A DNA stretch of 64,000 nt from Octopus sinensis (GCF_006345805.1 NC_043001.1:29822001-29886000); one strand, 5' to 3'; numbered from the stretch's first letter, positions 11,836 through 40,059 are shown. Notes: a model not told the origin generated them from the letters alone. A program made the numbers and translations.

Positions 11836-12231
11836 TCTTTCTACTATAGGCACAAGGCCTGGAATTAGGGACAGCGGATTAGTCGAATACATCGACCCAG
11901 ATACTCAACTGGTACTTATTTCGTAGATCCCGAAAGGATGAAAAGCAAAATCGACTCCAGCGTGTTTTGAACTCAGAACGTAAAGACAGACGAAACACCT
12001 ATTTCTTTACTACCCACAAGGAGCTAAACACAGAGGGGACAAACAAGGACAGACAAATGGATTAAGTCGATTATATCGACCCCAGTGTGTAACAGGTACT
12101 TATTTAATCGACCCCCGAAAGGATGAAAGGCAAAGTCGACCTCGGCGGAATTTGAACTCACAACGTAACGGCAGACGAAATACCGCTAAGTATTTCGTCC
12201 GGTGTGCTAACGTTTCTGCCAGCTCGTCGCC
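11836..12231 (-). mobile_element. SINE B dimer (B1 unit + headless B2 unit)
   Basis: Head at 12231, B1 tail at about 12000, second unit restarts at GGTGTTTCG, and the array ends in the B2 tail (...CAGGCCTTGTGCCTATAGTAGAAAAG). Confidence 0.82.
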
Positions 12232-12895
12232 ATAACAAAGAAGCTAAATTCCATCAAACAGCTGTCTACGAAAGTTCGAGAATCACTTCTGAGACGGAGC
12301 ACTAAGGTGACCTATAGAAATATCTGGAACCAGTACGGCAGGCAAATGACACCTTTTTTGTGTCATGCTAAAAGGAGTCTCCCGTATAGAGTAAAATGTA
12401 AGTTATGCTAGCGATAGTGGCGAAGGCAATAGCAATGGCGACGACGTTGATGTTCACAACGGTTAATGGAGAACGATATGGAAGGAGAACGAGAGAAATA
12501 TAGAGAGGGAAGAAGACACTGGCATCGAGTAAAGAGAGATAGATAAAGAAAACATGAGAAAAAGAGAGGGATAAAAAAGATAAAGGTAAAAAAGAAAACG
12601 AAGAAAAAGAAAATAAGAGATGATAATAGTAAATGGTGACGGTGGTGGTGATAATGTTTATTTGTTCTTTATAATGGTTGTTATTTGTTGGTCGTGGATA
12701 GGCATGATGTGGTAGAGGCGACGGTATTGCTCCACGACAATTACTTGCACGAAAGCCTATTCGTTAAGACATACGGTATCTTTTAAACTTCAGTTTTCAA
12801 ACATAGTTTGCCATCGCACTACCACCACCACCATCACCATCAACACAGCAAACAACAATAGTTCCAAGTATATACACAAACACACACACACACAC

Positions 12896-12949
<54 letters not shown>

Positions 12950-13124
12950 CCAGAAACGATGGGATTTCGTTATCTTCTTTCTCTTTACCATATACGGGTT
13001 ACAAATTCTGTTTGTTTGTGGAGACTTATTTTTCTAGTAGTAGTAATGGTGACCTATTTGGCTGCTATTTCTAATATTTTCGGTATGTGGTTTTGAGCAA
13101 CTAGTTGCAATTAACCCTTTATTA

Positions 13125-13175
<51 letters not shown>

Positions 13176-13197
13176 TATATATCCTTTAAGGATTTAA

Positions 13198-13240
<43 letters not shown>

Positions 13241-13379
13241 AATAAAATAGAACATATGCATATATATAAACATATATGTACGTACCTACCTCTACATGTA
13301 CATATACACGCATATATGTGTACAGGACACCAAAAAGACGTCGAACACATAGAGAGACGAAAAACATAGACACAAACCA

Positions 13380-13860
13380 AGGAACAGGACAAGCAAAAAA
13401 GAAAAAAAGAGATACAGGACAATAATCCCCTTCTTCAGTCGCTAAGGTTTCATCTACTCTACGTTTCGAAGGATAAAAGCGAGACGTATACTTCGAAGAA
13501 ACTTCCTTCCTGCGAAAAGCAAATCAATTAAAATTCTGAGATCTTTTCGCAGAGGGGTAAAAAATGGTAAAAAAAGCAAGACGGTAACGACAGTACAAAC
13601 ATATAAACAGTAAAAAAAAAAAAAATTATATATAAACAGTTGAAAAATAAATATATAACAGTGAGAGACAGGACAAGGAGAACAAGATAAGAAGGGCTGT
13701 TTACGCCAGACGAAAAAAGTAATGCAAACGCTGGATTATAGTGGACGACGAGAGAGAAAGAATGTCGACCAGTGGCCTTAGAAGGCGGGCGAGAAAAGAC
13801 AGGATAGCAGTTACGACGGAAGTATCGTCGCAGATGGACGACGGGAATGGGGGAGGAGGA
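13380..13860 (-). mobile_element. Probable Penelope-like element terminal-repeat remnant
   Basis: The minus strand carries CGAAACGT (13461-13468) and CTGAAGA (13433-13439) hammerhead half-motifs in the pyrimidine-rich context typical of PLE repeats. Confidence 0.35.
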
Positions 13861-13884
13861 GGAAGAGAGATATCCTTAAATCCT

Positions 13885-14272
13885 TAAAAATTTTTCAACC
13901 CGAAAGCTGCGGCCATGCTGGGGCACCATCGTTGAATGAGCTACACTAGTATGTGAAACCACTTCTGATACATGGCACTTGGTCAACAAGGGAGTTCGGC
14001 GCCGCTGCCCGCATCTGTGTTTCCTGCCGAGAAGTAGGTTCATCTGGAACCTCTGACAAGAAGAGATCCAGTTTAGTTTTAAAGAAACCCACATCCACAC
14101 CATGCAAGTCTCTCAGGCATTTAGGAAGGATATTGAAGAGCTGTGGTCCCCTGAAACCCAAGCTGTTGCAGTATCTGATCCTGTATTTTGATGGTGATGT
14201 TGGGATCTTTGGGGCAACTTTCAATGCCAAAATTCGGGACAAGACCCTCCAGGATTTTCCAGTTCAGGCGAT
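13885..14272 (-). mobile_element. 5'-truncated CR1-clade LINE 3' end
   Basis: ORF 13946-14242 reads NSLGFRGPQLFNILPKCLRDL...FFKTKLDLFLSEVPDEP, the CR1-type ORF2 terminus. A short 3' UTR follows, then an (AAGGATTT)-like tail. Confidence 0.8.
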
Positions 14273-14344
14273 GGTGAGGGACAAACATAGATACACCAAC
14301 ATACACATACACGCATATATATATATATATATATATATCAATAA

Positions 14345-14433
<89 letters not shown>

Positions 14434-15213
14434 CGGGCTTCTTTCAGTTTCCGTCTAAGTAGCTTGCTTCCCAACCACATAGTTCCGAATTCAGTCCCAC
14501 TGCGTGACACCTCGGGTTATAATGGATTTGATAGCCGGAAACTGAAAGAAGCCCGTCACACACACACACACACATATATGTATATATATATATATATATA
14601 TATACATACATATATAGGGGGGGGGGTAAGTAAGAAGAAAAATAAGCGAAAATACACATTGGAAATCAAAAAAATTAAAGCATTTTTATGAAAAGTAACG
14701 ATAGATATATACAACTAGATGAACTGAGGTAGGAAGTAATAAAAGTCATTATTGTGAATTGTTTATGAGATTTAAAAGCATACCGGTTTCGTAAATTTAC
14801 TAATCATTGCTTTGAATGCACACCGATTAATGAACGGTGTCAGGTCTACTATTCCCTGAGTAAAAAAATATTGTGTGTAAGGGTGGTAAGTAGTTCTGGA
14901 TTTGGTGCAATTAGGGTACATATAGATTTGTAATACCTATATATACGTATGTGCCCGCGTACGCGCATGATTATACGTCTGTATCAATTCATCAGCACTT
15001 CATTTTGTTTCATTTTTCCAATCTTTCTCTGTTACCACCCCAACTAACAATTCTACCACCCTTCTCTTCCATCTCTCTGGCCCTCCCTATCTTCCCGGAC
15101 ATTCGCTGTCGTCTCTAGTATCATAATAACGACAGTCAGCTACAATTCTCAGTTTTCACGCGTTTCGAAAACAACAACAACAACAACAATAACAACAACA
15201 CTAATAATAACAC

Positions 15214-15260
<47 letters not shown>

Positions 15261-15268
<8 letters not shown>

Positions 15269-15483
15269 TTAAAAATATTCAGACAAATACATAACAAAAA
15301 CACCAGGACTTACAAACACATATAACATGCAGAAAATTGCACTACTAGGCACTGCACACATCCTACGCAGAACACTTTCCATACAATAACCATCAGAGCA
15401 TCACAACAAATCACAGCACATACCCAAGGCACACAGAGCTGCGCTCGGTAGTGAAGTGAAAGTACCCTATAAAAATAAAACTA

Positions 15484-15486
<3 letters not shown>
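15261..15486 (+). mobile_element. 5'-truncated R4/Dong-like RLE LINE 3' end inside (AAT)n
   Basis: Translates ...MQKIALLGTAHILRRTLSIQ*, the typical R4-clade C-terminus. (AAT)n lies on both sides (about 15200-15260 and 15487-15540). Confidence 0.72.
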
Positions 15487-15540
<54 letters not shown>

Positions 15541-15788
15541 CCCGAAAGGATGAAAGGCGAAGTCGACCTCGGCACAGGGCCTGAAATTTGGGGATAGGGG
15601 ATAGTTAATAACATTGACCTCAGTACTCAACTGGATCTTATTTTATCGACCCCGAAAGGATGAAAGGCAAAGTCAACCTCGGCGGAATTTGAACTCAGAA
15701 CATGAAGACGGACGAAATGCTGTTAAGCATTTTGCCCGGCGAGCCAGCGATTCTGCCAGCTATGTTGGCATGCATTGCTCTCTCACAC

Positions 15789-15830
<42 letters not shown>

Positions 15831-16340
15831 CCTTTCTACTATAGGCACAAGGCTTGAAATTTGGGGGAGGGGACTAGTCGATTACATCGACCCCAGTGTT
15901 TCACTAGTACTTAATTTATCGACCCCAAAAGGAGGAAAGGCCAAGTCGACACCAGTAGAATTTGAACTCAAAATGTAGCGGTAGACGAAATACCTATTTC
16001 TTTACTACCCACAAGGGGGTAAACACAGAGAGGACAAACAAGGACAGACAAATGGATTAAGTCGATTAATTAAGCGTAACTGGTACTTAATTTATCTACT
16101 CCGAAAGGATGAAGGGCAAAGTCGACCTCGGCGGAATTTGAACTCAGAACGTAATGGCAGACGAAATACCTATTTCTTTACTACCCACAAGGGGCTACAC
16201 ACAGAGGGGACAAACAAGGACAGACAAACGGATTAAGTCGACTATATCGACCCCAGTGCGTAACTGGTACTTATTTTGGCAGACGAAATACCGCTAAGCT
16301 TTTCGCCCGGCGTGCTAACGATTTTGCCAGCTCGCTGCCT
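15831..16340 (-). mobile_element. SINE B trimer (B1, B1, B2)
   Basis: Two GACGAAATACC|TATTTCTTTACTACCCACAAGGGG junctions; terminal B2 tail adjacent to (AAT)n. Confidence 0.82.
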
Positions 16341-16344
16341 CAAT

Positions 16345-16376
<32 letters not shown>

Positions 16377-16887
16377 AACCTCTACTATGACGATGAAATG
16401 GTACTTATCTAGTAAAGAGGACTGAATCCTACAGCTTGTGTTCGAACATAAAAGCAGCAAAAAGTCGCATTTTATTGTCAAGGGATAGTGTAAATTCGCA
16501 AAGGTACTTGTCGTCAACTTTGAATTAGATGAAGAACCTGAAACCACTACTATCAAGCACACAAAACAAATCAAACAAACTGCTCAAAAGAACGGGAACA
16601 AACAAATTGAGTAGCTATGGAGCTAGAAGTCCCTGCATGGACAATATATTCTTAGAAATCAAAATGCTGATGTAAACCAAGCAACAACCCATCAGTGACT
16701 GAAGAGTTTAGGAGTGAAAGCGGAGACTGTTCAACAGGTACTTATTTTATCGACCCCAACAGGATGAAAGGCTAAGTCGACAGCGGCAGAATTTGAATTC
16801 AGAACGTAGCGACTGACGAAATACCGCTAAGTATTTCACCCGGTGTACTAACGATTCTGCCAGCTCGCTGCCTTGATGATAATAATG

Positions 16888-16944
<57 letters not shown>

Positions 16945-17054
16945 CCCTGATGCAGTACCAGGAAGTGACTCTCATAGCTTCTGATCTTAACTGATTGGAA
17001 GTGTTATCGTGTACATTGTTTTGTCTTGGTATAAAAGATGGGCTACAGCACAAG

Positions 17055-18350: not shown

Positions 18351-18429
<79 letters not shown>

Positions 18430-18658
18430 TTTTCAAATTTTGCATCAAGAGCAACTTTTTAAGGGGAGGGGATGAGTTGATTACATTGACTCCACTGTTC
18501 AACAGGTACTTATTTTATCGACCCCAACAGGATGAAAGGCTAAGACGACCGCGGCGGAATTTGAATTCAGAACGTAGCAACTGACGAAATACCGCAAAGT
18601 ATTTCACCCGGTGTACTAACGATTCTGCCAGCTCGCTGCCTTGATGATGATGATGATG

Positions 18659-18709
<51 letters not shown>

Positions 18710-18728
18710 TAATAATAATAATAATAAT

Positions 18729-19276
18729 GCCCTGATGCAGTACCAGGAAGTGACTCTCATAGCTTCTGATCTTAACTGATTGGAAGTGTTATCGTGTACA
18801 TTGTTTTGTCTTGGTATAAAAGATGGGCTACAGCAAATATTCTGCTCAATACCACAGATTTGCTTCTCAGTTGCTTGACCTTAACCAATTGAGCATGTTG
18901 CTTAGTGGCTGATGGCATGTGCATCCCTGATCATGAGCAGAAGTAGTGGGGGAGCATCATAGCCATGTGTTGAGAGGGTTTCTTTGGGGTTTGGATAATT
19001 CACCTTTTGGAAACATGGGTGGTTCGTTCAACATCCTTAAACAACCTTTATTCAGGGACCTTTTGAGTGAGATGGATTAATCGACTTGAAGAAAATTCTA
19101 ACTGGGCCACGCCTCCAAGGTCATGCACAGTTTTTCTTGATATGAGATTACTATATCTCGTACATATGGTTGTGATGCATGTGCCTGGTGTATCAGACGA
19201 GTAGTCATGATGGGTATACTGGCTTCGTATATTCCACCCCAGTGTCACTTTGATGGCATGCACTGCTTTCCCACTC
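18729..19276. mobile_element. 548-bp element flanked by (AAT)n on both sides; partial copies at 16944-17050 and about 17870-18350
   Basis: Starts GCCCTGATGCAGTACC directly after (AAT)n and ends CCACTC directly before (AAT)n. Three homologous copies lie within 2.4 kb. Confidence 0.7.
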
Positions 19277-19293
19277 AATAATAATAATAATAA

Positions 19294-19497
19294 TTCTTTC
19301 TACTAAAGGCACAAGGCCTGAAAACAGGGGGAAGGGTAAGTCGATTACTTCGTCCCCAGCACTCAGCTGGTACTTAATTTATCGATCTCGGAAGGATGAA
19401 AGGCAAAGTCTACCTCGGCGGAATTTGAACTCAGAACGTAGCGACATGCGAAATACCGCTATGCATTTTGCTAACGATTCGGCCAGCTCATCGCCTT
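19294..19497 (-). mobile_element. SINE 'B2' monomer between (AAT)n tracts
   Basis: B-family head and body with the B2 tail (CAGGCCTTGTGCCTTTAGTAGAAAG). Confidence 0.8.
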
Positions 19498-21351: not shown

Positions 21352-21390
<39 letters not shown>

Positions 21391-25357: not shown

Positions 25358-25690
25358 ATATCATATCATATCATATCATATCATATCATATCATATCATA
25401 TCATACCATACCATACCATACCATATCATCATATCATATCATATCATATCACATCACATCACATCACATCACATCACATCACATCACATCACATCACATC
25501 ACATCACATCACATCACATCACATCACATCACATCACATCACATCACATCACGCCACGCCACGCCACGCCACGCCACGCCACGCCACGCCACGCCACGCC
25601 ACGCCACGCCACGCCACGCCACGCCACGCCACGCCACGCCACGTCACGTCACATCACATCACATCACATCACATCACATCACATCACATT
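25358..25690. repeat. Compound pentanucleotide microsatellite (ATATC, ATACC, ATCAC, ACGCC, ACGTC, ATCAC)
   Basis: Directly visible blocks of 5-nt units changing stepwise. Confidence 0.95.
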
Positions 25691-28600
25691 AAGGCGGCCA
25701 GCTGGCAGAATCGTTAGCACGCTGCGGTTAATTTGTCTGCGAGAATTTGGTTAGTTATTGTTATTGTTGCCATTTATTGTTAAATTTTGAATTTTTGTTA
25801 TTGTTCTACGTTCTGTTTTAACAGACGTAGTAGACTGTTGTTCCCCTCCGTAAAGAGGGGAAAATAATTTTTGGAAAAAATATTTTTGGAAAATATTTAT
25901 TTTTGTGAAATTGAATTCGGAGGACAAGTCTTCTAACCCTGACCAAGCTAACCAAAGAGCAACTGTAAAACAAAACAAAATGATCGAGAATGTGAACGAA
26001 AACCACATAAATGCAGTAAACGGGGAAAAGGAACCAAGAAGGAAAAATAAATGCTGAAAACGATAAAATGAATAACGGAAAAGTAAACCCAACAGAAGAC
26101 AACCAAAAGAAGATTAATTTTGTCACCGCAGCAGGTGTGAGAAAAAATAAATTGAACATAGAGCTAGATTCACCGCGGCAACACAAAGGTATGTTCGAAA
26201 GGGAAGGTTTTGAAGTTAAAGCCACCCTCCCTAACGAACTCATCGAAGGAACAAAGAGGAAAATAATAACATATAAGACTATGATAATAACAGACAAGAA
26301 AATAGACAAGGAATCCAAAGAACAAATCGAGAAGTGTCTACAACCCATCTTGGCAAGACATCGAGTTCTTGACCATAGGGAGAAGATACGCCACAGCTGT
26401 GGTGGACTTCAAAAACGAGGAAAAGGCTATAAAACACTCGCTCCAACCGATAAAAACCAATGAAGTCATTTTATTACTAACTTATATGGGTAGCAGAACA
26501 TCCAAAATAGTTATTGAGGAAATCGCACCAGAAATAAATGCCATCTGGATTATCTCAGACCTTCTAATGGGGTTTGAGGATAAAATCAAAATGATTGAAA
26601 CTTCCAGAATACAACAACAGTACTGGCGGGGCCAAGGGCTAGAGATCATAGTCCAAGTCCCCCCCCCCGCCCCCGACATTAGAAGAAATTGCAGAGAACA
26701 TGCACATCGGAGAAGAAGCCACCTTGCGGGTATTGGTGGAGGGCAGGAAACCCAGGTGCCACGAATGTGGCGAAAAAGGCCACATTCGGGTAAACTGCCC
26801 CACCCGCAAGGAGAAAGAAGAAGAAAAAAAGAACAAAACCAAAAGAACGACCAGCAGAACCCCGGCACTGATGGTGTTCAACGAGCCGGGGAAAAAGACG
26901 GCTGGTCGGTAGTAAGACGCCAAAAAGGGAAAAATAATAACAACAGATCCAACCCTACAACAACCAAAAGAAAAACTCAGGATACTCAGAGAAAAATGAC
27001 CCCACCCCACCACTATTCCCCCACCCCAAGTCAAAAATATCAGATTCCTCCCCATCCTATTCCCCCTTGGCGATGATTCCCCTCCCCCTTGCTCCTCTGG
27101 TTCGGATTTCCTCCCTCTCCCAGACATCACTCCTCACCCGCCAAACCCAGGCAATCTGTCCCCGATATCAAGTTCAAGAAAATCTAACGAATGTAAGGAA
27201 ATACTAACTGCAATAAACAATGATAACGAACAATTAAAAAAAAAGGTTAAAGCAAATACCAACGGCGTCAATTTACAAACATCACCATAAGACTCCAGAA
27301 AATATTGCCATTTATAAAATAGATAAAATGAACTATAACATTTTTAAAAACTACCACCCAACTGACATGGGTCCTCCAAGACTTGATTTTAGCAAGTCGA
27401 TGTACGAGGACCTATGCCAGAATATCACCCGACGAACCAGTGAAAAAGAGAGTACCATTGACTAAGGTAAGTCCACGTCAAGCATTCATGTTGGATGTAT
27501 AAATGTGCGTGGCCTGACGTCTAGTTGGAAGCATGGACGCCTCCTAAATGACGTCAGGTCACGGGATTTAGATGTTGTTGTTGCTACAGAAACACTGTTG
27601 AAGGGGCCGAGAGATCTGCTACCGCTGTTTGACGGTTACGAGAGTTTCATCTCTCCGTGCTGTCCTCTTAGCGGGAGCGGGGTGTTGATCCTCTTAAAAA
27701 AACCGTGTTTCTGAGAAAAGGTTGATTTTTACAAATCCAGAAGATAGGCTGGTAGTCATTGACTTGACGTTCAGTCGTTGTAAGACTGTCAGACCGGTTG
27801 CAATTTATACACCTCAAGATACGGGGCAAACTGAATATTATCGGAACCTAGAGAAGTTTCTTGGTACATCACATCCCTTAGTTGTGCTAGGAGACTATAA
27901 TACAATCTGTGATGCACACGTAGATTATGTTGGCTCGTGTGTTAATAGGAGAAGCAATGCTTGCTTCCAGGTACTACTAAGACGTTTTGACATGGGCAAA
28001 TAGCGACGGATCTTCCAGGTCTTATCTAGATAGAGTATTAGTTAGAAAAGTAGATAAGAACTTAGCTAGGTGTCCACAATTTCACATGGTCAACAACAGT
28101 GATCACAAGATGGTCACCTGTAATCTCGAAATAGATAAGTTATATAGAGGTCCCGACTACTGGAAACTTAATACGTCCCTTTTGGCGATTAATGAGTACA
28201 GAGACCGGATTAAGATGTTAATTCAAAGGGCATTAAGCGGATCCATTATTAACAACAAATGGTGGTATGCCTTCAAGCGAGCCATTAAATATGAGTCTAT
28301 GAGATATAGCATAGGTTTAGTGACTAGAGAGGTTAGAGAGGCTAGAAGGGAATCAGCTCTAGTTAAGGACTTAGAGGAAGCAATGCGAACTTTGCGGCTC
28401 AGGTGAAGGCCAAGAGACTGGTGTTAAACCAGCACATCAAAGCCAAACACACGAGTTGCATTGTCAGGGCGTACATAACATGCAGTGGGTTGCGAGGGAA
28501 TCAATGCTGCGGTATGGGCCCGAATGGAAGCCCAACGTGACAATGATGCCACAATTCGATCTTTGACGAACCAACAAAGGTAAGTTGATAGACGACCCCG

Positions 28601-31160
28601 AGGAGATGTGTGAGAGCTTTCAGGACCACTTCGCCCAGCTTTTCGTGGGGGGGGGGGGAGTGTGGGAAGGACTAACGGATTTTCTCGCCGATATTCCACG
28701 CCTCTCGGGGCAGGATGCGAGGTGTAGTGAGGGGCCGATCATGCCTGAGAAGATAAAAGAGATTATGTCGGGGAGGGGTGACGCTCGTCAGAAAGGACCC
28801 GAACAAGAGCGATGTCATTGATAATTTTAGGCTCATCACTCTGCTCAACGCAGAGCTGAAGATTTTGGCCAAAGTGGTATCGAAAGATTGGCGCGTGTTG
28901 CGGATGGGCTGATTGGGGGAGCACAGACATGTGCTATCCCTGGCAGATCCATTCAGGATAATCTCCATCTTATACGATACACTAAAGAGGAAATTAATAA
29001 CGATTCCGGCTAGGGAGGAGCAGTGGTCCATTTAGACCAATCAAAAGCTTTTAATAGAGTTGACCATCACTACCTGGTGTCCGTTCTGGCACAGTTCGGC
29101 CTGGGGTCTTGGCTTCCTCAGGTGGATCGTTCAAATGTATAATAGCATTGACTCGGTAGTTCGGGTGAACGGCATTCTTTCTAAGCCGTTCTACGTCAAA
29201 TGCTCGGTTCGTCAAGGATGTCTGCTCTACCCACTTTTGTATGTGATGGCTCTTGAGCCATTGCTGCGAAAGCTGAGTGACATTCCGAGACAGCCAAGTT
29301 GTAAGATGTCGGTTTCTGCCTACGCGGATGACATCACCATCATCGTGACCAAAATGGTTCACCTACAGAGGGTAAGCAAGGCCATTGAAAAATATGAGAC
29401 TGTAGCAGGAGCAGAAGTTAATCGTGAAAAGTCTTTCGGCTTGCAGCTCAGCATCTGGAGAGGCAAGTCGATACCTTCTGACAGCGTCGTGGGACGTTGA
29501 ACGGAGGGTCCGATTAATTTGCTAGGAGTTTGGTTCGTACCAGACCTCCAAATAGAGAATTGAACCGAGGTATCGAGCAGGATGACCCACATTACCAAGA
29601 CCTGGTCTAGGCGGTGGTTGATCAAGCTGGAAAGACAGCTTCTTGTGGCAGGGCTTGAAACCGATTGTGAGACAATCTATTTGCTGTCAACAACCGTTAA
29701 AGGGTAGGTTAGGGATGCCTTGACTATTGATGCGCAGACATGCGCCGAGGCTGAGGCACCTGTGACTCTACCTGGATGGGAAACGGTTGTGGTCTTCGCT
29801 GGCGAAGCAGATGCTTCCCAGGTTCACTAGTTTCGGTGGACGGGAAACCTGGTTCAATCGAAGTCGGGTACATAGTATACGGAGTGTCGCAAGGCACTCC
29901 TGCTTTTCCGTTGCTCGGGCAATGCATGTGGTAGTGGTTCCACCGCTGTCTTTTATAGAGGGTTTGTAGAAGCGGAATGTGATGATGCATTGGGGGAGAC
30001 CCTAGGTTTTGACGATAATCAGCTGGCCAGTCTGTTCCAACGTACATTCAGGCCGAAGACCCTGGATAATTCCAGAAGTCTTTGGCATAGCAGTGTTACC
30101 GCGGAGCCTTACCTGTCCAGGCTAAACTCTCAAGGCACGATAGCCGAGACATTCCGATCTGTCCAAGATGTGGGCGGGACAAGGAAACCGTCCCGCACGC
30201 TATCGTTCAGTGCCCGGAAATGTCTGACGTGTGGATTTATGTCGAACAACTGATGTCAGGTGGAGGAAGAGTACAGCTGTCGATTGAATCTATAGTGAAA
30301 ATTCACTCACCGGATTTCTTAACGAAAGAAGATAAGAATTGTTTTCTTTCTGAAGTAGCAACTGCGAGAGGGATTATACGGAGGACAAGAATGAAATGAA
30401 TAAGGTCAGGCACCTTCATCTTTGGCCCTAATCTGGTGAATTTTTTTCATCTTCCACCTAAAAAGGCAAATAGGGCTGGAGAGGACATGTTTGCCTGAAG
30501 ACATGTTTGGAAAAAGGTGGAAGAATATCGCACGAATGTTGGGCATGAAAGGCCCCGCGTGAAACCCAGGTCAGTGGTAAGGTGGGGGTTCATGGGATCC
30601 ATTATAAACCCGCCTCCACTCCATCTGTTGTGTCTTATTGTGTCCTATCATCATTCCGTATTATATATAATGTATTTAGAATTTTTAAAAGGACCCCAAT
30701 CGCATTTCATGTAAAACCATTCGATTTCATTGTGCTGTCCCTTCTATGTATGTCCTTATGGATAATAAAAAATTAAGAATCGTTAGCACGCCGGGCGAAA
30801 TGTTTAGCGGTACTTCATCTGCCGTTAGGGTTTTGAGTTCGAAATCCGCCGAGGTCGACTTTGCCTTTCATCCTTTTGGGGTCGATAAATAAAGTACCAG
30901 TTACGCACTGGGGTCGATGTAATTGACTTAATCCCTTTGTCTGTCCTTGTTTGTTCCCTCTGTTTGGCCCCTTGTGGGCAATAAAGAAATAGGTACTTCG
31001 TCTGCCGTTAGGGTTTTGAGTTCGAAATCCGCCGAGGTCGACTTTGCCTTTCATCCTTTCGGGGTTGATAAAATTAGTACCAGTTACGTACTGGTGTCGA
31101 TGTAATCAATTTAATCTCTTCCCTCAAAATTTGAGGTCTTGTGCTTCCAGTAGAAAGGAT
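25691..31160 (+). mobile_element. SINE B dimer (B1+B2) split by the Tx1 insertion (head 25691-25722; remainder 30776-31160)
   Basis: Removing the Tx1 element and one TSD copy restores AAGGCGGCCAGCTGGCAGAATCGTTAGCACGCCGGGCGAAATG... Confidence 0.85.
25723..30775 (+). mobile_element. Near full-length, decayed Tx1-clade LINE (ORF1 gag-like CCHC; ORF2 APE endonuclease + RT) with 16-bp TSD
   Basis: ORF1 knuckle CHECGEKGHIRVNC. APE start IHVGCINVRGL...VATET. RT motifs LDQSKAFNRVDH, VRQGCLLYPLLY and YADD (29321-29332). Many stops and frameshifts. TSD AGAATCGTTAGCACGC at 25707-25722 and 30776-30791. Confidence 0.93.
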
Positions 31161-31254: not shown

Positions 31255-31296
<42 letters not shown>

Positions 31297-31912: not shown

Positions 31913-32443
31913 GTAAAAAGTTTTTGCCTTCTTAGAGGAATTAAGAAGGCAAACACTTCTCTCTGGCCATATCAAAACGAAACTGCATTAGATATAAATT
32001 GACAATTAAGTTATTTTGGAATTTATCAACAACGTTTGAATGTAAGCACGATGATGAGGAGTAACCCGTGCTGGTCTCAAGCAGTAAACGATAGAGTAAA
32101 AAGCTCATGTAATCGAATTATTATGATTTCTTTAAAACATTTCGTATACCACACTTGTATCATAGTGGATAATATTTATTAGCGATAGAGGCAATATTAA
32201 TGATGCATACCGAGAGGTAATATTTATCCCCAGTTAAACGTGGATGTTCTGTAAGATCTACGTATGTTCTGTTAGAACTGCGGTGATTACCATGAGAGAA
32301 ACTCATATTGGCAATGCATCAAAAGCCAATATGAAAGTTTCTCTCATTTTCATTACCACAGTATAGTTTGTTCTAACAGTACATCCATGTTTAAGTGGGG
32401 ATAAATACATAGAACATAAATGTAGTAGTATATGATGCGGTAT

Positions 32444-34589
32444 AAGGCGGTGAGCTGGCAGAATCGTTAGCACGCCGGGCGAAATGCTTAGTGGTATTTC
32501 ATCTGCCGTTATGTTCTGAGTTCAAATTCCGCCGAGGTCGACTTTGCCTTTCATCCTTTCGGGGTCGATTAAATAAGTACCAGTTACGCAATAGGCTCGA
32601 TGTAATCGACTTAATCCGTTTGTCTGTCCTTGTTTGTCCCCTCTGTGTTTAGCCCCTTGTTGGTAGTAAAGAAATAGGTATTTCGACGGCCGTTACGTTC
32701 TGAGTTCAAATTCCGCCGAGGTCGACTTTGCCTTTCATCCTTTCGGGGTCGATTAAATAAGTACCAGTTACGCACTGGGGTCGCTATAATCGACTTAATC
32801 CGTTTGTCTGTCCTTGTTTGTTCCCTCTGTGTGTAGCCCCTTGTGGGTAGTAAAGAAATATATACTGTGTATTACAGATTGATTTTGTTGTTCTTTGTGC
32901 TGCGTTTGCAGCAGTTTTTGAGTTGTTGTGCTGTCTCTCGGTAGTACTGAGAGATGGCAGGGGGAAGTTGTGTATATTCGGATCTAAGCGAAACTGAGTT
33001 GTCCTCTTCGGAGGAAGAACTGATTAAGGCAGTAAAGATGTTGGACGCATATCTGGAAAAGAAAAGTTTTGCAGAGGCAACCGAGATGAGAAGGAAGAAA
33101 ATAAACCTGGCAAATATGGAAAGAGACAGTAGAATGGCTGTAAAGGTGGGGAACGACGTGAGGTTGTCCCCACGACAGACAAGGATGGAGGAAATCCAAA
33201 AGAAGATGGTAAAGTACAAAGTTTACTCAGTTGAGAAAAAGAGAGTCGACCACATGGAGGAGAAAGTGATAGACAAGGCGCTGATGACAGTCTGAGCAGA
33301 TATTACCTACCTGGCCAGAGGAAGCAAGTTCGGGACGATTATCGTTCATTATAAAACAGAGGAAAGAGCCCAAGCTGCCAAAGTGTTAAAAACGGAAAAG
33401 GTACTCCTCTTGCCGTCTTACATGGGCAAGAGGATTGCCAAAATCAAAGTGGAAGGGATTCCTCCTGAAATCGATGCGGCTTGGGTGGTGGCGACTCTCT
33501 TTATTGAAAGAGAAAAAAAGGTGAAAGTAATTCAAGCGGATGTGATGGAAGGAGCAACATGGAAGGGGCAAAAACATCGAAATTACCGAGAACCTGTGGA
33601 TTGGGGATTTGATCCTGAAAGTGTGGATGGAGGGCAGGATTCCTCGCTGTTTTAAATGTGGCCAGAAAGGCAACATAAAAGTGAACTGCCCTCCACCACC
33701 CAAAATGGTAGAAGAGCGACAACCACCATCACAGGAGAGGATTCAAGAAGTAGAAAGAGAAACTCCAGTATTAGAAGATAGAGAATGGGAAATAGCCGGA
33801 AAATAGCCGGGAAAAGAAAAAAAAAGAAAAAGAAAGTAAGTACTTGTGAACCCCCAACCCACCTAGTGCCCTCCCTCTCCCTATTCACCACACCCTCCCC
33901 ACGCAGACACCAAACCTACCCATTCCCCTCCAACAACAAAACAGAAAAAAAATGCAAACACACATGATGTAGATATGGCTCCCTCTCCCCCTGCTTGTTT
34001 TGCTTGCGTTTTGTATGCGGACGCGGAGGGTGACGCTGTAAACCGGGGGAGCGAGTGGAATTCTGGGGTGAAGATGGTGATCCTATGATATGTCAATTGT
34101 TAAATAAGGCACACATGGAGATGGTAAAAAAGTATGATAAGGGTATTGAGTTGTGGAAGGTGGTCGGGGAAAGAGAGCAATTGCCAAAACAGACTTGGTA
34201 TATCGAACTAAAAAATGACTACAATATTGAACTGCTGAATTTTAGATTAGTATGATTGAACGGCAAAACGGTTTCGATGTAACCACTCGACTTCGGGGGT
34301 CGAGTGGGCATTCCGCCTCATTATATTATCTTTTTCATGAATCATTCGTTTCTTTTAATTTTGCTTCTTTTTTTATGTCTCCTTTTTATAATTTTAGTTC
34401 CCCTGGTGGGTAATAAAGAAATCGGTATTTCATGTCTTTACGTTCTGAGTTCAAATTCCGCCGAGGTCGACTTTGCCTTTCATCCTTTCGGGGTCGATAA
34501 ATTAAGTACTAGTTGCGTACTGGGGTCGATCTAATCGACTGGCCCCCTCCCCAAAAATTTCGAGCCTTGTGCCTAGAGTAGAAAAGAAG
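32444..34589 (+). mobile_element. SINE B array (B1, B1, [Tx1 derivative], B2) with diverged 14-bp flanking TSD
   Basis: ATATGATGCGGTAT (32430-32443) and ATATAATGCAGTAT (34590-34603) flank the whole composite. Confidence 0.8.
32861..34422 (+). mobile_element. ORF1-only Tx1 derivative (ORF2 almost wholly absent)
   Basis: ORF1 remnants are homologous to the 25.7-kb element (LLLPSYMGKRIAKIKVEGIPPEIDAAW; CFKCGQKGNIKVNC). About 165 bp of 3' sequence follows, ending TTTAGTTCCCCTGGTGGGTAATAAAGAAAT. Confidence 0.8.
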
Positions 34590-34946
34590 ATATAATGCAG
34601 TATATGAAATATTAGCAACTATCAGAAAGCATCACATATTTTTTTAATAAGTTTGAAATTCATCTTTTAGTGTTTTTAATGAAGCTTAGTTTTGAACTTT
34701 CGATGTGCATGTTTACAACTAAACTTAGAGCAAATGACTGAAAATATTTCTGAAAAGTAAACTTGACTTTTTCGATAACTAAGCTCCACTACCCTTCATT
34801 AAAAAACAAAGAAGGCAGAACTAGTTTGCATGAAAATATCGTATGTTATGAAATAAAAAGATTCGGAATTGTATTAAAAAAAAAAAAAAAGACAATAAGA
34901 GGGAGACAGAAACAGCAGAATAAGCTCCGCAACAGAACAATCTTCA

Positions 34947-35798
34947 ATGAGTGCCTTGCAATTGCTACGCTCTTTTTCAGCGAGAATACCTTCTGATACT
35001 ACGACATGCTGTCTGACGACGATACTTAGATATGATACAGATATCATAGCAGTTGACTACTCTAATAAAAAATTAAAGACGTTCTGCGAAGAAGGTGTAT
35101 GTTTAAGTGTGTTAAATCTACAGTCGTCTCCAAGAAGGGCATGCGTTACACCTGAAGGAGAAATTGTAGTGACGTTACAAGGAGAATATATGATTATGTT
35201 TCTCGTGAAATTTGGACACCAACTTTTTCCTTCGCTTGACATTCCCACAGCAAAAGACTATGCTCTCATTGAAGCTGTTGATAATTCATTAATCTGTGGT
35301 AAATGTGGTTGTCCAGGCTACATAGACGTCATCGATTACAGGGGTCATGTGTTACACAGCTTCTCCGCATTCTCATCAAATGGTCTCCGTATTTCATTTC
35401 CCTCTTATCTAGCTGTGCATCCGTTAGGTGATCTTCTCCTCAGTGAAGTACGAAGCGATGGCTACCAGGCATTAATTCGCTGCAATCTAAGTGGTGATAT
35501 AAAATTCTTTTACCAAGGAGCTAAAAAAACTTTGAAATGTCCTTCTGGCGTTTCTGTAGATAAAAATGGTTATATCTATGTAGCCTGTAGAATGCAAAAC
35601 CAAATCTATTGCCTTACGTCAGCGGGTAGACTTCATTATGTTCTAAAAACGAAACCAAACGCGATTTCGAATCCTGGATCTATTTTTGTAACTCCTGATG
35701 GATCAACGCTCATTTTAGCAGAATTTGGGTCAGAAAATGTGAAAGTGTTTGATATACAGTCTGTCGATGACTATATAACGGATGTGGATTCCTGTTAA
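34947..35798 (+). CDS. NHL-repeat / six-bladed beta-propeller protein (TRIM-NHL C-terminal type domain); single-exon gene or terminal exon
   Basis: Uninterrupted 283-aa ORF of normal complexity with repeated blade motifs (IIAVDYSNKKLKTF, PRRACVTPEGEIVV, PSYLAVHPLGDLLLSE, PSGVSVDKNGYIYVAC, PGSIFVTPDGSTLILAE). In-frame stop at 34896-34898 upstream. AATAAA downstream. Confidence 0.82.
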   Translation: MSALQLLRSFSARIPSDTTTCCLTTILRYDTDIIAVDYSNKKLKTFCEEGVCLSVLNLQSSPRRACVTPEGEIVVTLQGEYMIMFLVKFGHQLFPSLDIPTAKDYALIEAVDNSLICGKCGCPGYIDVIDYRGHVLHSFSAFSSNGLRISFPSYLAVHPLGDLLLSEVRSDGYQALIRCNLSGDIKFFYQGAKKTLKCPSGVSVDKNGYIYVACRMQNQIYCLTSAGRLHYVLKTKPNAISNPGSIFVTPDGSTLILAEFGSENVKVFDIQSVDDYITDVDSC

Positions 35799-35914
35799 CA
35801 GAACAACTCTTTAAACAAGGTCCGTAGGACTTTCAGCTCTGTTTTAATACAAATTCATTTCTTAAAATTCATTTTTATTTGCATTGTAGTATTTATAAGA
35901 CATATCGATGTTTA

Positions 35915-35920
35915 AATAAA
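35915..35920 (+). terminator. Candidate polyadenylation signal of the NHL gene
   Basis: AATAAA about 117 nt after the stop codon, followed by a T-rich tract (cgtttttttatat). Confidence 0.55.
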
Positions 35921-38198
35921 CGTTTTTTTATATAAATATATAAAATTTAATCTGAATTTTAAATTAAACCTTTTAAAATTTAATATTTGACTACGCTTAA
36001 AACGACTGATTTAATCTACCGATTATCTTAATTATATGTATTAAAGATTTATTGTTGAAACATAGTACTCGCGATATCTAAAAACTAAGCTTTGTTTTAT
36101 TTATTTATTTATTTGTTTCGTTTTTTTTTTTATCACAAGTAAATCGAAAATAAACTTGATGAGCTAAAATTGACCGTGTAATTGTCTTAAATTTAGTCGC
36201 CTGAATATATTTTGCGTTTAAAGGTCTTGTACAATAATTCAAGTATTTCGCATTAAATATTTTTTTCGTGGAAAATGTTAGACAATTATATTTTTCTCTT
36301 TACGACTGTATGGTTATTGCGACGCGAAATATCTGAGCAAAATATTTCGTAGTTTCTGGTCAACTGGTGACATGAGTGAATTTCCGTTGAGGAATGCATT
36401 TCAAGTAAAATTACATATATGTGATATACAGTAGTAATAGCACGCTAACATGTGCTGTAACATTGCATCGCTTCATCCACCATTCATTGGTGATTACCTG
36501 CCACTCCAGGCAGATGATGCCTTTGTACCACTCGGGCGACAGCTCCACCAACATGGGTTTGTTTGGGCGGTTATTATTGGTTGGGGTGTAAATACTACCA
36601 CAACGTCTTTTAGTTGCGTTTCACGACATGCAGAGGAAATGTTGGGTCTAGTCTTTGACATGCCGACCCACACACAATACACGAATGTAATATGTATCTT
36701 ATGTACGATAGTGTGTGTGTGTGTATATATAGTTGGAATTTACAAAAAAAAAAGACGAAGACAGGTGTGTAAACAACAAACAGGTGTATTAGTTTAACGC
36801 TCGGGAAGGTGAGAAAGTCTTTTACGTTTCGAGCCTACGCTCTTCAACAGAAAGGAACTCGATAAAATAGAGGAAAAAAAGCTTTAGTGGCCAGCGGTCA
36901 ATCATGGAGATATGTGTGTGTGTGTGTGTGTGTATTATGCAATATATTATGAGTTACTGCTGACCTGTTCAGCCATCTCGCTTGGGCGTTTACCTTCAGC
37001 CCTGGGTTCGCCTTATTTCCCCACCGTTTGTTCTTTTTTTTTTTCGTCTACCTTTCTTTTTCTCTTAATCAAATCCTGTAGGATATGCGTCCTGCCTTAA
37101 TGCTGTATCAGTTGTAAGGCTTTATCTCTCTGTGTGTGTGTGTGTGTGTGTCGTTTTTCTTTTGTTTGTTTTCGTGATCGTCCTTTACGTTTGCTCACTT
37201 AACTTAAATTTCAGCTATAGTTGTCTGCTGTACTGAGCCAACGCGCCCTATAACGGCTGTCTGGGAATTCTGTTGCCATCCGTCCGCTTTACATGTCCAT
37301 AAAGCAAGATGGAATGAACAGGTTTTAATCACAAAAATTGTTTCTCTGCATTGATAACAGCTGTTACTTGTTAATTTTCTATATCACACTATAACATAAA
37401 ATATTAGATAAATAATATGGATAAGAGGATGACCACGCGTCTGTTCAAGAAAAAACATTTGCAAACGATACCGAATAATTCTAGTCTATCTCTAAATATC
37501 TTTGTTAATCTAGCTTCATAAAAGACATTTATGAAAGAATATTAATTAAAAAGAAAAAAACAATTTAGATTTGGTTAATTTGAATTTGTACGTTTGATTT
37601 TTATTTGCATTGACTAATTTTGGTCCATTTTGTAATGCATACTTTCAATTTTTACTGCCATTACTTTATTTGGTACTTTTACAACTTACGTTTATTTAAA
37701 TCCTATAAATTACTCAGGGTAGGGAGATGCTAAAAATACAACAGGTATAACATGATGCGAAATTGAACATGAACCGGCAGCACTATCAAAGCCACTCACC
37801 TGACGACGTGCCTGTTCACAACAGCTACAGGATCGTATTCACGTTATTATTTATGATGTAATAGAATATGGAATACTCAGCTACTAACAGCTGTTATCAA
37901 TGTACAGACACAATTGTGATTAAACCATGTTCATTCCATCTTGTTTTATGTTTATATTTTGCATATACTAACAGATTTCCACATGTATATCCAATAAAAG
38001 GAGTAATCTTGCTATATAATACCATACGATAGCTGATAACTGTATAGGAGCTTTGGAGGTTATTACCCAGACACACACACACGTCTGTGTGTGCGCGCGC
38101 AAGCGCAGAAGTTGATTCACGCTTATTTCAGCATTGCACATTACTTTTCTCGCTTAATATTCTTTTCTACCAGTGGCCAATTAAAAAAAGAAATATTC

Positions 38199-38585
38199 TT
38201 TTCTACTCAAGACACAAGGCCCGACATTTTGGAGGAGGGGGGGCAGTCTATTAGATCGACCCCAGTACGCAACTGGTACTTAATTTATCGACCCCGAAAG
38301 GATGAAAGGTAAAGTCGACCTCGGTGGAATTTGAACTCAGAACGTAACCGCAGACGAAATACCTATTTCTTTACAACACACAAGGGGCTAAACACAGAGG
38401 AGACAAACAAGGGCAGACAAACGGATTAAGTCGATTATATCGACCCCAGTGCGTAACTGGTGCTTATTTAATCGACCCCGAAAGGATGAAAGGCAAAGTC
38501 GACCTCGGCAAAATTTGAACTCAGAACGGTAGCGGTAGACGAAATACCGCTAGGCATTTCGCACGGCGTGTTAACATTTCTGCCA
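38199..38585 (-). mobile_element. SINE B dimer (B1+B2)
   Basis: Junction GACGAAATACC|TATTTCTTTAC at about 38355-38375; B2 tail at the 38199 end. Confidence 0.82.
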
Positions 38586-39073
38586 TAAATACATTTCTCC
38601 CTCGTACTACGAGTGCTGGCCAGTCAGTTATTTTTGATTCGTAACTATGATTTCTAGTTATCTCATTGCGCAATGTTTGGGCAAGTGTATTATAGCTTCT
38701 AGCTGACTATTGTCACTTGAATCAACTTCAGCGTTGGAAAACCGTGTGCGAGGACTATAATATATGTATTTGAGAAAGCTTTCATGTGTACATCCATTTT
38801 ATTCTGTTACTCTTTGTACGTAATTATCGCTTTCTTCTTGAATACATTGTTGAATCTCTTAATTTTCTTTCTCCCGACTCCTCAGTGAAATGTTTGCCAT
38901 TTCGAATCACTTTCTCATTAATAGATTTTGCTTAATCCAAGTGGCGAATATATTATATGATTGCTAGTTCAAATTGGGCTCTCCACCAAATGTTGTCTTG
39001 TTATATATTTAAGAAAGTGTGTGTGTGTCCCTCCAGTTACTCTTTGCTGAATCTCTAAATACTATTTTACACT

Positions 39074-39646
39074 AAGGCGGCGAGTTGGCACAAAGTTGCC
39101 GGGTGAAATGCTTAGCGGTATTTCGCCTGCCGCTACGTTCTGAGTTCAAATTCCGCCGAGGTCGACTTTACCTTTCATCCTTTCGGGGTCGATAAATTAA
39201 GTACCAGTTACGCACTGAGGTCGATGTAATCGACTTATTCCGTTTGTCTGTCCTTATTGGTCCTCTCTGTGTTTAGCCCCTTGTGGGAAGTAAAGAAATA
39301 GGTATTTCGTCTGCCGCTACGTTTTGAGTTCGAATTCCGCCGAGGTCGTCTTTGCGTTTCATCCTTTCGGGGTCGATAAATTAAGTACCAGTTACGCACT
39401 GAGGTCGATATAATCGACTTATTCCGTTTGTCTGTCCCTTTTCGTCTCCTCTGTGTTTAGCCCCTTGTGGGTAGTAAAGAAATATGTATTTCGTCTCTTT
39501 ATGTTCTGAGTTCAAATTCTGCAGAGGTCGTCTTTGCTTGTCATCCTTTCGGGAACGATAGATTAAGTACCAGTTGCGTACTGGGTCGATGTAATCGACT
39601 GGCCCCCTCCTCCAAAAATTTCGGCCCTTGTTCCTAGAGTAGAAAA
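39074..39646 (+). mobile_element. SINE B trimer (B1, B1, B2) with 17-bp TSD
   Basis: TSD AAATACTATTTTA(C/T)ACT at 39057-39073 and 39647-39663. Confidence 0.87.
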
Positions 39647-40059
39647 AAATACTATTTTATACTTATGCTTTTTATATTGAAAGCTTTGCCTCTCTCCCTC
39701 TAGAAAACAATTTTAAATTTAATATGGAACTGCTGCTATCTATATCAGTATGCACATTATATCAACTATTTATATTTAATTTTCGTGTTAAGTCAAATTT
39801 TGGGGGTATGAGTTCATATTACGTACACAACGATATGTAGTCTTTCGTTGTACGATTTGCAATAAATTATTTCAATTCTAATACCCTATGTTAGAGATGG
39901 ATTTGAAGGAGAAGTGGCTTTATTTCTTGTAGTTGAGTGACTACAACAACTACCGTCCTGCTAGTGAGTCTATGATTATATCAGGGAGGGAATTATGTTT
40001 AAAGATAAGGGGGGAAATGTGGGAAAGATAGTTGCGTGTGTTCGAGATGAGATTTACAT

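What the first reader, a model, noticed from the sequence alone, without database searches (positions are those of the whole stretch)
11836..39663. Stereotyped SINE B arrays restart at one fixed internal site and always end in a B2 tail: self-targeting retroposition?
Seen in six arrays (11836-12231, 15831-16340, 30776-31160, 32444-34589, 38199-38585, 39074-39646). Each has one head, then 1-2 units ending in the B1 (Tx1-like) tail, and each later unit restarts at the same internal position (...AAAGAAATA|GGTATTTC...). The last unit always has the different B2 tail, and TSDs flank whole arrays (17 bp at 39057/39647; 14 bp at 32430/34590). In one array a non-homologous Tx1 derivative fills a unit slot with the same 3' junction (GAAAT|CGGTATTTC at 34422). 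A B1 nested in an RTE host also joins at GGTAC (48676). Adjacent units share private variants (GTTAGGGTTTT and GTTCGAAATCC in both units at 30.8-31.1 kb). Established: Tx1-clade endonucleases are often target-specific for multicopy sequences. Inference: Tx1 machinery repeatedly inserts B1 and Tx1 RNAs into existing B SINEs at GGTAY. The alternative is a composite B1-B2 family plus local slippage.
Basis: partly seen in the sequence, partly recalled or inferred. Interest (0 to 1): 0.75.

Follow-up and report, generated by a model that had tools for sequence, protein, structure and literature searches.

The report
SINE arrays built at one hairpin site
A short mobile element in what looks like a cephalopod genome repeatedly forms head-to-tail arrays that restart at one fixed internal position; this is most likely because its partner LINE machinery inserts new copies into a hairpin inside resident copies, but one 64-kb window cannot prove that.

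Summary
Six SINE B arrays each have one head, then 1-2 units ending in a 65-nt B1 tail, then a last unit with a B2 tail. All nine B1-to-unit junctions fall at one position (GAAATA|GGTATTTC eight times, TGTATTTC once). That position is the first base of the 3' arm of a predicted 13-bp hairpin.

The B1 tail is homologous to the 3' ends of three L1/Tx1-group LINE copies in the window. Tx1 membership itself was not testable.

Recurrent insertion is partly supported:
- Terminal units belong to at least three B2 subfamilies, while B1 units are 90-95% alike.
- An ORF1-only LINE derivative fills one unit slot at the same site.
- A second derivative, with a clean 17-bp TSD, sits antisense 3 nt away in an old SINE B.
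- A 5-kb LINE splits another array's head.

Points against:
- Free B1 copies land at TATATA targets, not GGTAY.
- No internal junction shows a TSD or a second head.
- The slot-filling LINE derivative has no TSD.
- The GGTAC case at 48677 is ambiguous.

A composite family that retroposes as a whole, and template-jump chimeras, remain live rivals. No other sequence from this genome was reachable. I rate it a new variant of a known kind, of moderate interest.

The parts
11837..12234 (-). Array A11: head 12185-12234; B1 unit 12000-12184; terminal B2 unit 11837-11999 (old B2 subfamily; junction GAAATA|GGTGTTTC)
   Evidence: no TSD found
15830..16338 (-). Array A15: head 16293-16338; B1 unit 1 16171-16292 (core lacks ~70 nt); B1 unit 2 15995-16170; terminal B2 unit 15830-15994. 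Flanked by (TTG)n upstream and (ATT)n downstream
25690..25722 (+). 5' part of the head of array A30, separated from the rest by LINE25
   Evidence: TSD AATCGTTAGCACGC on both sides of the LINE
25723..30775 (+). LINE25: degenerate L1/Tx1-group LINE (ORF1 with CCHC knuckle, APE, RT, C-terminal zinc motif). It is inserted in the SINE B head, and its tail GGATAATAAAAAATTAAG is related to the B1 tail
30776..31159 (+). Rest of array A30: 3' part of head 30776-30808; B1 unit 30809-30991; terminal B2-type unit 30992-31159. The two units share five private variants in their first ~45 nt
32446..34587 (+). Array A32: head 32446-32492; B1 units 32493-32676 and 32677-32860; LINE derivative 32861-34423 (5' UTR, ORF1 with CCHC knuckle, LINE-type tail GGGTAATAAAGAAATC); terminal B2a unit 34424-34587. 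Probable 15-bp TSD outside the whole array
38200..38585 (-). Array A38: 5'-truncated head 38549-38585; B1 unit 38364-38548; terminal B2a unit 38200-38363
39057..39663 (+). Array A39 with its TSDs: TSD 39057-39073; head 39074-39116 (degenerate); B1 units 39117-39300 and 39301-39484; terminal B2a unit 39485-39646 (junction GAAATA|TGTATTTC); TSD 39647-39663
9346..9576 (-). Free B1 monomer inside a (TA)n microsatellite
50053..50281 (-). Free B1 monomer with 16-bp TSD TATATG(A/T)CTGCGTGAA
50485..50717 (+). Free B1 monomer with 16-18-bp TSD TATATATACTGATATATA
48455..48677 (+). Free B1 monomer inside another repeat, followed by GGTACTGG. No clear TSD; about 16 nt of the host repeat unit is missing
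55935..56297 (-). Short LINE derivative LINEd2 (55952-56280, tail GGGTAATAAAGAATCA) with perfect 17-bp TSDs (55935-55951 and 56281-56297). It lies antisense in an old SINE B, which is cut at GGT^ATTTCG in the hairpin
19296..19497 (-). Free B2 monomer in (ATT)n with an intact GGTATTTCG site, i.e. the kind of element the insertion model needs as a target

Best explanation
RNAs that carry the L1/Tx1-group LINE tail (B1 SINEs and ORF1-only LINE derivatives) are repeatedly reverse-transcribed into resident SINE B copies. The entry point is a nick at the start of the 3' arm of the SINE's own hairpin (...TTAGC^GGTATTTCG).

A sense-oriented B1 copy is homologous to its target. The upstream target end can therefore pair with the new cDNA at the matching GGTATTTCG... 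stretch. The extra head is lost and the target-site duplication is hidden inside the repeat. The product is: resident head, B1 unit(s), then the resident unit with its original B2 tail and the original outer TSDs. Finished arrays may afterwards be copied as wholes.

Shown: the anatomy, the LINE origin of the B1 tail, and two independent LINE insertions at this hairpin. Inferred: the nick at ^GG for B1, and the homology-guided 5' join.
For: 1. The same junction joins near-uniform B1 units (90-95% alike between arrays) to terminal units of at least three B2 subfamilies (72-91% alike). A single founding event therefore does not fit.
2. LINEd2 has a perfect 17-bp TSD, and the rebuilt empty site is an old SINE B cut 3 nt from the array junction on the other strand. 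There are about 30 such sites, each taken as 7 nt wide, in 64 kb, so the chance is roughly 0.3% per insertion.
3. LINE25's TSD ends at the 5' base of the same hairpin.
4. A non-homologous LINE derivative occupies a unit slot with the same 3' junction.
5. The model explains several absences without extra assumptions: exactly one head per array, always at the 5' end; a B2 tail always last (1/5005 by chance); no headless monomers; no tail|head junctions.
6. Whole-array TSDs exist at A39 and probably at A32.
7. CpG retention is lower in head plus terminal unit than in the internal B1 units. In A39 it is 9/14 against 18/18 (p=0.01); pooled it is 65/89 against 63/72 (p=0.03).
Against: - TSD-flanked free B1 copies sit at TATATA-type sites, not GGTA.
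- None of the nine internal junctions shows a TSD or a second head.
- There are nine sense and no antisense B1 insertions in SINE B.
- The LINE derivative in A32 has no TSD, and a B1 tail abuts its 5' end directly. Under this model that needs a TSD-less event or an added template jump.
- The heads of A11 and A15 do not look older than their B1 units.
- The CpG signal rests mainly on one array.
- The hairpin is not significantly more stable than shuffled sequence as DNA.
- No B2a monomer, the supposed target, is present in the window.
- Only one 64-kb window was available.
Confidence: 0.42

Rival explanations
1. Composite SINE family. A B1-B2 dimer arose once or a few times, by whatever accident. 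It is transcribed from the single head through the whole array and retroposes as one unit using the B2 tail. Unit number changes by slippage, unequal exchange or RT slippage on the 184-nt repeats. Free B1 monomers arise when reverse transcription starts at an internal B1 tail.
For: - It explains whole-array TSDs, the single head, the B2 tail always last, the fixed junction and the absence of antisense B1.
- B2a-type tails occur only in arrays in this window, 3 of 3.
- In A32 and A38 the B1 and B2a parts are about equally diverged.
- There is no TTTT run inside the units to stop Pol III.
- The B1 at 48455-48677 ends in GGTA, as expected for a 4-nt read-through from an array-resident source.
- A B1 followed by a B2a-like tail is also seen on an unrelated 543-bp contig.
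- Units within A30 and A39 share private variants.
Against: - Terminal units belong to at least three B2 subfamilies while B1 units are uniform, so several independent foundings at the same base would still be needed.
- There are no position-specific (unit 1 versus unit 2) diagnostic substitutions across the trimers.
- B1 units within A32 are no closer to each other than to free monomers.
- The LINE derivative exactly in a unit slot still needs a hot spot at the junction.
- No array ends in a B1 tail, although internal initiation in trimers should produce such arrays.
Confidence: 0.25
2. Template-jump chimeras made in a single retroposition event. The LINE reverse transcriptase starts on a B2 RNA that lacks its 5' part, for example because it was cut in the hairpin loop. 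It runs off the end at G48 and jumps to the 3' end of a tail-bearing RNA (B1 or a LINE derivative). This may happen more than once before integration.
For: - It gives one outer TSD and no internal TSDs.
- Every internal junction reads 'exact 3' end of one RNA | 5' end of another'. This includes the apparently full-length 5' end of the LINE derivative in A32, which has ~94 nt before the ORF1 ATG and a B1 tail abutting it without a TSD.
- The junction lies at the loop/stem boundary of the predicted RNA hairpin.
- A microhomology (GCC) chimera at 15541-15600 shows that template switching happens in this SINE system.
- Template switching is the accepted route for module exchange in SINEs (PMC4758252, PMC4494074).
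Against: - There is no tail|head junction anywhere, although full-length SINE RNAs also have 5' ends.
- No headless monomer starts at G48: 9 of 9 run-offs would have had to jump.
- The acceptor is always B1 or the LINE and never B2, and the starter is always B2, although both tails are mobilised at similar targets.
- As argued in PMC4494074, template switching usually affects a minority of copies. Here arrays hold 9 of the 13 B1 units.
- It cannot explain LINEd2 or LINE25 landing in the hairpin.
- The CpG difference in A39 is unexpected if all parts share one insertion date.
Confidence: 0.2
3. Local tandem duplication after insertion (replication slippage or unequal crossing-over) of a single dimeric element, with no role for retroposition in array growth.
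For: A30 units share five private variants in their first ~45 nt, and the two B1 units of A39 are each other's closest relatives at 92.9%.
Against: - It cannot create the first B1-tail|core junction.
- B1 units within A32 are no more alike (93.5%) than they are to free monomers (94-95%).
- It does not explain why six separate loci have identical breakpoints, or why a LINE derivative sits in a slot.
Confidence: 0.05

Closest known systems
Tx1-mobilised target-specific SINEs (SINEU-3 in the crocodilian Mariner-N4_AMi; Kojima 2015, PMC4494074)
   Same: The SINE and its Tx1-type LINE partners land in the same multicopy element. Repeated hits give tandem SINE copies. LINE copies share the target.
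   Different: In that system the target is an unrelated DNA transposon, and the tandem copies are full-length and sandwich a TSD. Here the target would be the SINE's own relatives, later units lack the head, no TSD is visible, and free copies go to TATATA sites.
Chimeric retrocopies made by LINE RT template switching (U6-L1 type; the module exchange in SINEs discussed in PMC4758252 and PMC4494074)
   Same: Several RNAs are joined head to tail inside one pair of TSDs, and the acceptor is joined at its exact 3' end.
   Different: In those chimeras the donor is truncated at variable positions and the chimeras are a small minority. Here the donor end is fixed to one base, the order of partners is invariant, and arrays are the commonest form.
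Dimeric and trimeric composite SINE families (for example the colugo CYN and rodent dimer SINEs cited in PMC4758252)
   Same: Monomer, dimer and trimer forms coexist, there is a single promoter-bearing head, and the whole element is flanked by TSDs.
   Different: Those are fusions of whole tRNA-like monomers that breed true as families. Here the repeated unit starts inside a hairpin, carries its own LINE tail, and is joined to several different terminal subfamilies.

Membership tests
SINE (non-autonomous, LINE-mobilised retroposon) | Short element flanked by variable target-site duplications | tested here: met
   TSDs of 16-18 bp flank B1 monomers at 50053 and 50485, the B2 monomer at 19296 and array A39
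SINE (non-autonomous, LINE-mobilised retroposon) | 3' tail shared with a partner LINE | tested here: met
   The last ~45 nt of the B1 tail align with the 3' ends of LINEd, LINEd2 and LINE25
SINE (non-autonomous, LINE-mobilised retroposon) | Head derived from a small RNA gene (tRNA) with an internal Pol III promoter | tested here: inconclusive
   A-box-like and B-box-like motifs (GAGTTCAAATTCC) can be read in the sequence, but ARAGORN finds no tRNA and Rfam gives no tRNA match. The fold gives a long hairpin, not a cloverleaf
Tx1 clade of non-LTR retrotransposons | APE endonuclease plus RT, with the RT grouping with Tx1 in a phylogeny | not testable with these tools
   APE and RT domains are present. 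The nearest solved structure is human L1 ORF2p, and relatives carry zf-RVT PF13966. No Tx1 reference sequences or clade classifier were available. L1-Tx1 families are reported as recently active in Octopus vulgaris (PMC13282606)
Tx1 clade of non-LTR retrotransposons | Most copies of a family inserted at one specific sequence | tested here: inconclusive
   Three of three LINE or LINE-derivative 3' ends lie in SINE B, two of them at the hairpin. However, three of four free B1 copies lie at TATATA-type sites. The sample is too small
   No other sequence from this genome or its relatives was found
   CpG retention for A39 is 9/14 against 18/18 (p=0.01) and pooled 65/89 against 63/72 (p=0.03). The other five arrays are individually not significant
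   There is no TSD at any internal junction or around the LINE derivative in A32. For B1 units this could be masked by homology. For the LINE derivative it cannot
Template-switch chimeric retrocopy | One TSD pair around the whole chimera, with the acceptor joined at its exact 3' end | tested here: met
   A39 and probably A32; nine B1 tails end at the same base
Template-switch chimeric retrocopy | Donor truncated at variable positions, and chimeras rare relative to simple copies | tested here: not met
   The donor end is fixed to one base in 9 of 9 junctions. Arrays hold 9 of the 13 B1 units
Composite (dimeric/trimeric) SINE family | Copies share position-specific diagnostic substitutions and co-diverged parts | tested here: not met
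   No unit-position signal was found. B1 parts are 90-95% alike while terminal parts are 72-91% alike and fall into at least three subfamilies. This rests on six arrays only

The most novel reading that the evidence does not exclude
This would be a SINE lineage whose own hairpin is the preferred landing site of its L1/Tx1-group partner. New copies nest into old ones in sense orientation, and sequence homology guides the 5' join. The SINE then grows into ordered arrays whose target-site duplications are hidden. That would be a self-targeting retroposon, and a route from dispersed SINEs to tandem repeats.
Probability: 0.4. Interest if true: 0.65.

Novelty: new variant of a known kind. Interest (0 to 1): 0.5.

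Why it matters
Target-specific LINEs are known to hit rRNA genes, snRNA genes, microsatellites and DNA transposons. A SINE that serves as the landing pad for its own family would be a new twist.

If nested self-insertion is right, it would do three things:
- Explain why SINE copies cluster and form short arrays in a genome where SINEs are reported to make up more than a tenth of the DNA (PMC13282606, for Octopus vulgaris).
- Provide a simple mechanism for turning dispersed repeats into tandem repeats.
- Show how homology at the 5' junction can hide target-site duplications, so that automatic repeat annotation would file such arrays as separate 'families'.

If the composite-family reading is right instead, the finding is ordinary SINE evolution.

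Tried and rejected
- More copies from the same genome. Exact-pattern scans of viral and metagenome contigs gave no hits. A search with the antisense ORF that spans the junction gave one 543-bp contig. Exact look-ups of two window ORFs found nothing. Three 20-kb loci carrying related LINEs, all from one ENA assembly, contain no SINE B.
- Names for LINE relatives to settle the Tx1 question. None carried a name.
- The 5' end of the slot-filling LINE derivative as a decayed TSD of the SINE core. Rejected: the alignment is no better than shuffles.
- The LINE derivative's tail as a TSD copy of the B1 tail. Rejected: it carries the LINE-type TAATAAAG shared by all three LINE copies, not the B1-type TAGTAAAG.
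- Base pairing between the B1 3' end (GAAAUA) and UAUUUC as a primer or jump guide. Worked through by hand, every version predicts either a retained loop or an inverted head, and neither is seen.
- Cruciform extrusion as the reason for a hot spot. The DNA hairpin is not more stable than shuffles.
- Head sequences as markers of B1 versus B2 origin. They are too short and too polymorphic.
- A sequence search of the literature gave no hit.

Full report
**Material.** The window is AT-rich eukaryotic DNA (GC 0.25-0.48) packed with retroposons. From memory, the repeats look like those of octopus genomes. I could not verify this: no public collection on hand holds the locus.

**Anatomy.** I read all six arrays in sense orientation. 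I then located four query pieces with short-word BLAST.
- HEAD: about 47 nt, AAGGCGGCGAGCTGGCAGAATCGTTAGCACGCCGGGCGAAATGCTTAGC.
- CORE: 119 nt, GGTATTTCGTCTGCC...AATCGACT, with a B-box-like GAGTTCAAATTCC.
- B1 tail: 65 nt, ending GGGTAGTAAAGAAATA.
- B2 tail: ending CCTTGTGCCTA(G/T)AGTAGAAA(A)G.

Every array is HEAD, then (CORE + B1 tail) once or twice, then CORE + B2 tail. TRF reports the 184-nt period.
- The nine B1-to-CORE junctions fall at one base. Eight read GAAATA|GGT..TTC and one reads GAAATA|TGTATTTC.
- Internal units are always B1 and terminal units are always B2. For 15 units dealt at random this has probability 1/5005.
- The window also holds four free B1 monomers and several free B2-type monomers of various ages.
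- No unit starting at GGTATTTC stands alone, no head is preceded by a tail, and no array ends in a B1 tail.

**The restart site.** Folded as RNA, the head and core form a 13-bp hairpin (C31-U43 paired with G48-G60, loop UAGC). Units restart at G48, the first base of the 3' arm. As DNA the hairpin is not more stable than shuffled sequence. ARAGORN and Rfam do not recognise a tRNA, so the tRNA origin of the head remains a resemblance only.

**The LINE partner.** A 5,053-bp degenerate LINE (25723-30775, here LINE25) has these features:
- an ORF1 with a CCHC knuckle;
- an endonuclease/exonuclease/phosphatase domain;
- an RT;
- a C-terminal CPRCGRDKETVPHAIVQC motif.

Its RT is closest to human L1 ORF2p among solved structures (2e-18, against 2e-13 for R2). 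Database relatives carry zf-RVT. That places it in the L1/Tx1 group. Tx1 membership proper could not be tested, because no relative carries a name. L1-Tx1 families are reported as recently active in Octopus vulgaris (PMC13282606).

The last ~45 nt of the B1 tail align with the 3' ends of this LINE and of two short derivatives. One is LINEd at 32861-34423, which retains only ORF1. The other is LINEd2 at 55952-56280 on the minus strand. B1 is therefore a SINE of this LINE group. The B2 tails have the same architecture but a different sequence.

**Target sites.**
- Free B1 copies have 16-18-bp TSDs that begin TATAT, or lie in (TA)n.
- The B2 monomer at 19296 lies in (ATT)n.
- Array A39 has a 17-bp TSD (16/17) around the whole array. 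A32 has a probable 15-bp one (13/15). The other four arrays show none.
- LINE25 has a 14-16-bp TSD, AATCGTTAGCACGC, and sits inside the head of the array at 30.8 kb. That array really begins near 25690. The downstream end of the TSD is the 5' base of the hairpin.
- LINEd2 has a perfect 17-bp TSD. Removing it and one TSD copy rebuilds an old SINE B cut at ...TTACAGT^ATTTATTAC. This aligns to GCTTAGCGGT^ATTTCGTC, 3 nt from the array junction and on the other strand.
- LINEd fills a unit slot in A32 with the same 3' junction (AAAGAAATC|GGTATTTC). It has no TSD, and a B1 tail abuts its 5' end. Its first 45 nt are not a decayed copy of the core.

**Unit relationships.**
- Terminal units are B2-type throughout (CAGTTG(C/A)GTA, and often GTCTTTACG). 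They fall into at least three subfamilies that are 72-91% alike.
- B1 units are 90-95% alike across arrays and resemble the free monomers.
- B1 units within A32 are no closer to each other (93.5%) than to free monomers.
- Those of A39 are each other's best match (92.9%).
- The two units of A30 share five private variants in their first ~45 nt.
- No substitution marks unit position across the trimers.
- CpG retention is lower in head plus terminal unit than in the internal B1 units. In A39 it is 9/14 against 18/18 (p=0.01). Pooled it is 65/89 against 63/72 (p=0.03). The other arrays are individually uninformative.

**Weighing the models.**
- Founding events. One founding event followed by amplification does not fit a fixed junction shared by several B2 subfamilies and a uniform B1. 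The junction must have formed repeatedly, or the parts must have been shuffled afterwards.
- For nested insertion. Two LINE insertions that owe nothing to the arrays (LINEd2 and LINE25) strike the same hairpin. A heterologous element fills a unit slot. The model also accounts for one head per array, the B2 tail always last, and the lack of headless monomers.
- What it must assume. The 5' junction would be guided by homology between the target and the new cDNA, which would also hide the TSD. That step is inferred. The precedent is the tandem, TSD-sandwiching insertions of Tx1-mobilised SINEU-3 (PMC4494074).
- Against nested insertion. Free B1 copies prefer TATATA sites. There are no antisense B1 insertions in SINE B. 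LINEd lacks a TSD.
- Template-jump model. It explains A32 best, since every junction there reads as an RNA 3' end joined to an RNA 5' end. A microhomology chimera at 15541-15600 shows that such switching occurs in this system. But it does not explain why full-length RNAs never receive a further unit, why all nine run-offs jumped, why B2 is never the acceptor, or why independent LINEs land in the hairpin.
- Composite-family model. It fits the B2a arrays well and may describe how finished arrays spread. The GGTA after the B1 at 48677 could be a 4-nt read-through from such a source rather than a target.
- My weights: nested insertion 0.42, composite family 0.25, template-jump chimeras 0.20, local duplication 0.05. 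The remainder is unassigned.

**Outside evidence.** One 543-bp ENA contig (L001) carries head, core and B1 tail followed by the last ~90 nt of a B2a-like unit. The junction there is GAAATA|AATATATTAAGT. This is either a different junction or a canonical dimer with an internal deletion at an ATA microhomology. It shows the B1-then-B2a order outside this window and nothing more.

**Verdict.** Still unproven are Tx1 identity, GGTAY specificity and stepwise growth in place. I rate it a new variant of a known kind, of moderate interest.

Noticed in passing
window 25723-30775 (+): A near full-length but frameshifted L1/Tx1-group LINE is inserted into the head of the 30.8-kb array with TSD AATCGTTAGCACGC. 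The array therefore starts near 25690, outside the coordinates given for it.
   Followed up: yes
window 55935-56297 (-): A 329-bp LINE derivative with a B1-like tail and a perfect 17-bp TSD lies antisense in an old SINE B, cutting its hairpin at GGT^ATTTCG. It is outside the finding's range but bears directly on it.
   Followed up: yes
window 15541-15600 (-): A B2 monomer's tail stops at ...CCCTGTGCC. It is followed by a 30-nt core fragment (GAGGTCGACTTCGCCTTTCATCCTTTCGGG) and then (ATT)n. The join shares GCC with the core, so it looks like a microhomology template switch.
   Followed up: partly
window 9220-9812, 50053-50281, 50485-50717: Young free B1 copies carry GCGTAGCCGTATTTC (CCG in place of CGG at the hairpin) and all sit at TATATA-type targets or in (TA)n. 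None of the array heads has this variant.
   Followed up: partly
window 16694-17050 and 18462-18835: A segment of ~350 bp or more, including a SINE B-like head plus half a core, is duplicated 1,768-1,785 bp apart at 96-100% identity. This is a local segmental duplication or a larger composite repeat.
   Followed up: partly
window 34947-35798 (+): A 283-aa open frame with NHL repeat / beta-propeller matches, possibly an exon of a host gene. It lies 360 bp downstream of array A32.
   Followed up: partly
window 59926-60663 (-): A 245-aa ORF with a Tc3-type transposase HTH domain (Tc1/mariner remnant).
   Followed up: no
window 61918-64000 (+): A second L1/Tx1-group LINE fragment, about 65% identical in DNA to LINE25 over 700 bp. 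It runs off the end of the window.
   Followed up: partly
window 48230-49000 (+): The host repeat of the B1 at 48455-48677 contains a 137-bp internal tandem repeat (48722-48984). About 16 nt of one host unit is missing at the B1 insertion, i.e. a target-site deletion rather than a duplication.
   Followed up: partly
L001 1-543: The only database sequence with this SINE is a 543-bp scaffold from an ENA metagenome (ERZ23499442). It carries head, core and B1 tail followed by the last ~90 nt of a B2a-like unit, with (ATT)n(GTT)n upstream of the head.
   Followed up: partly
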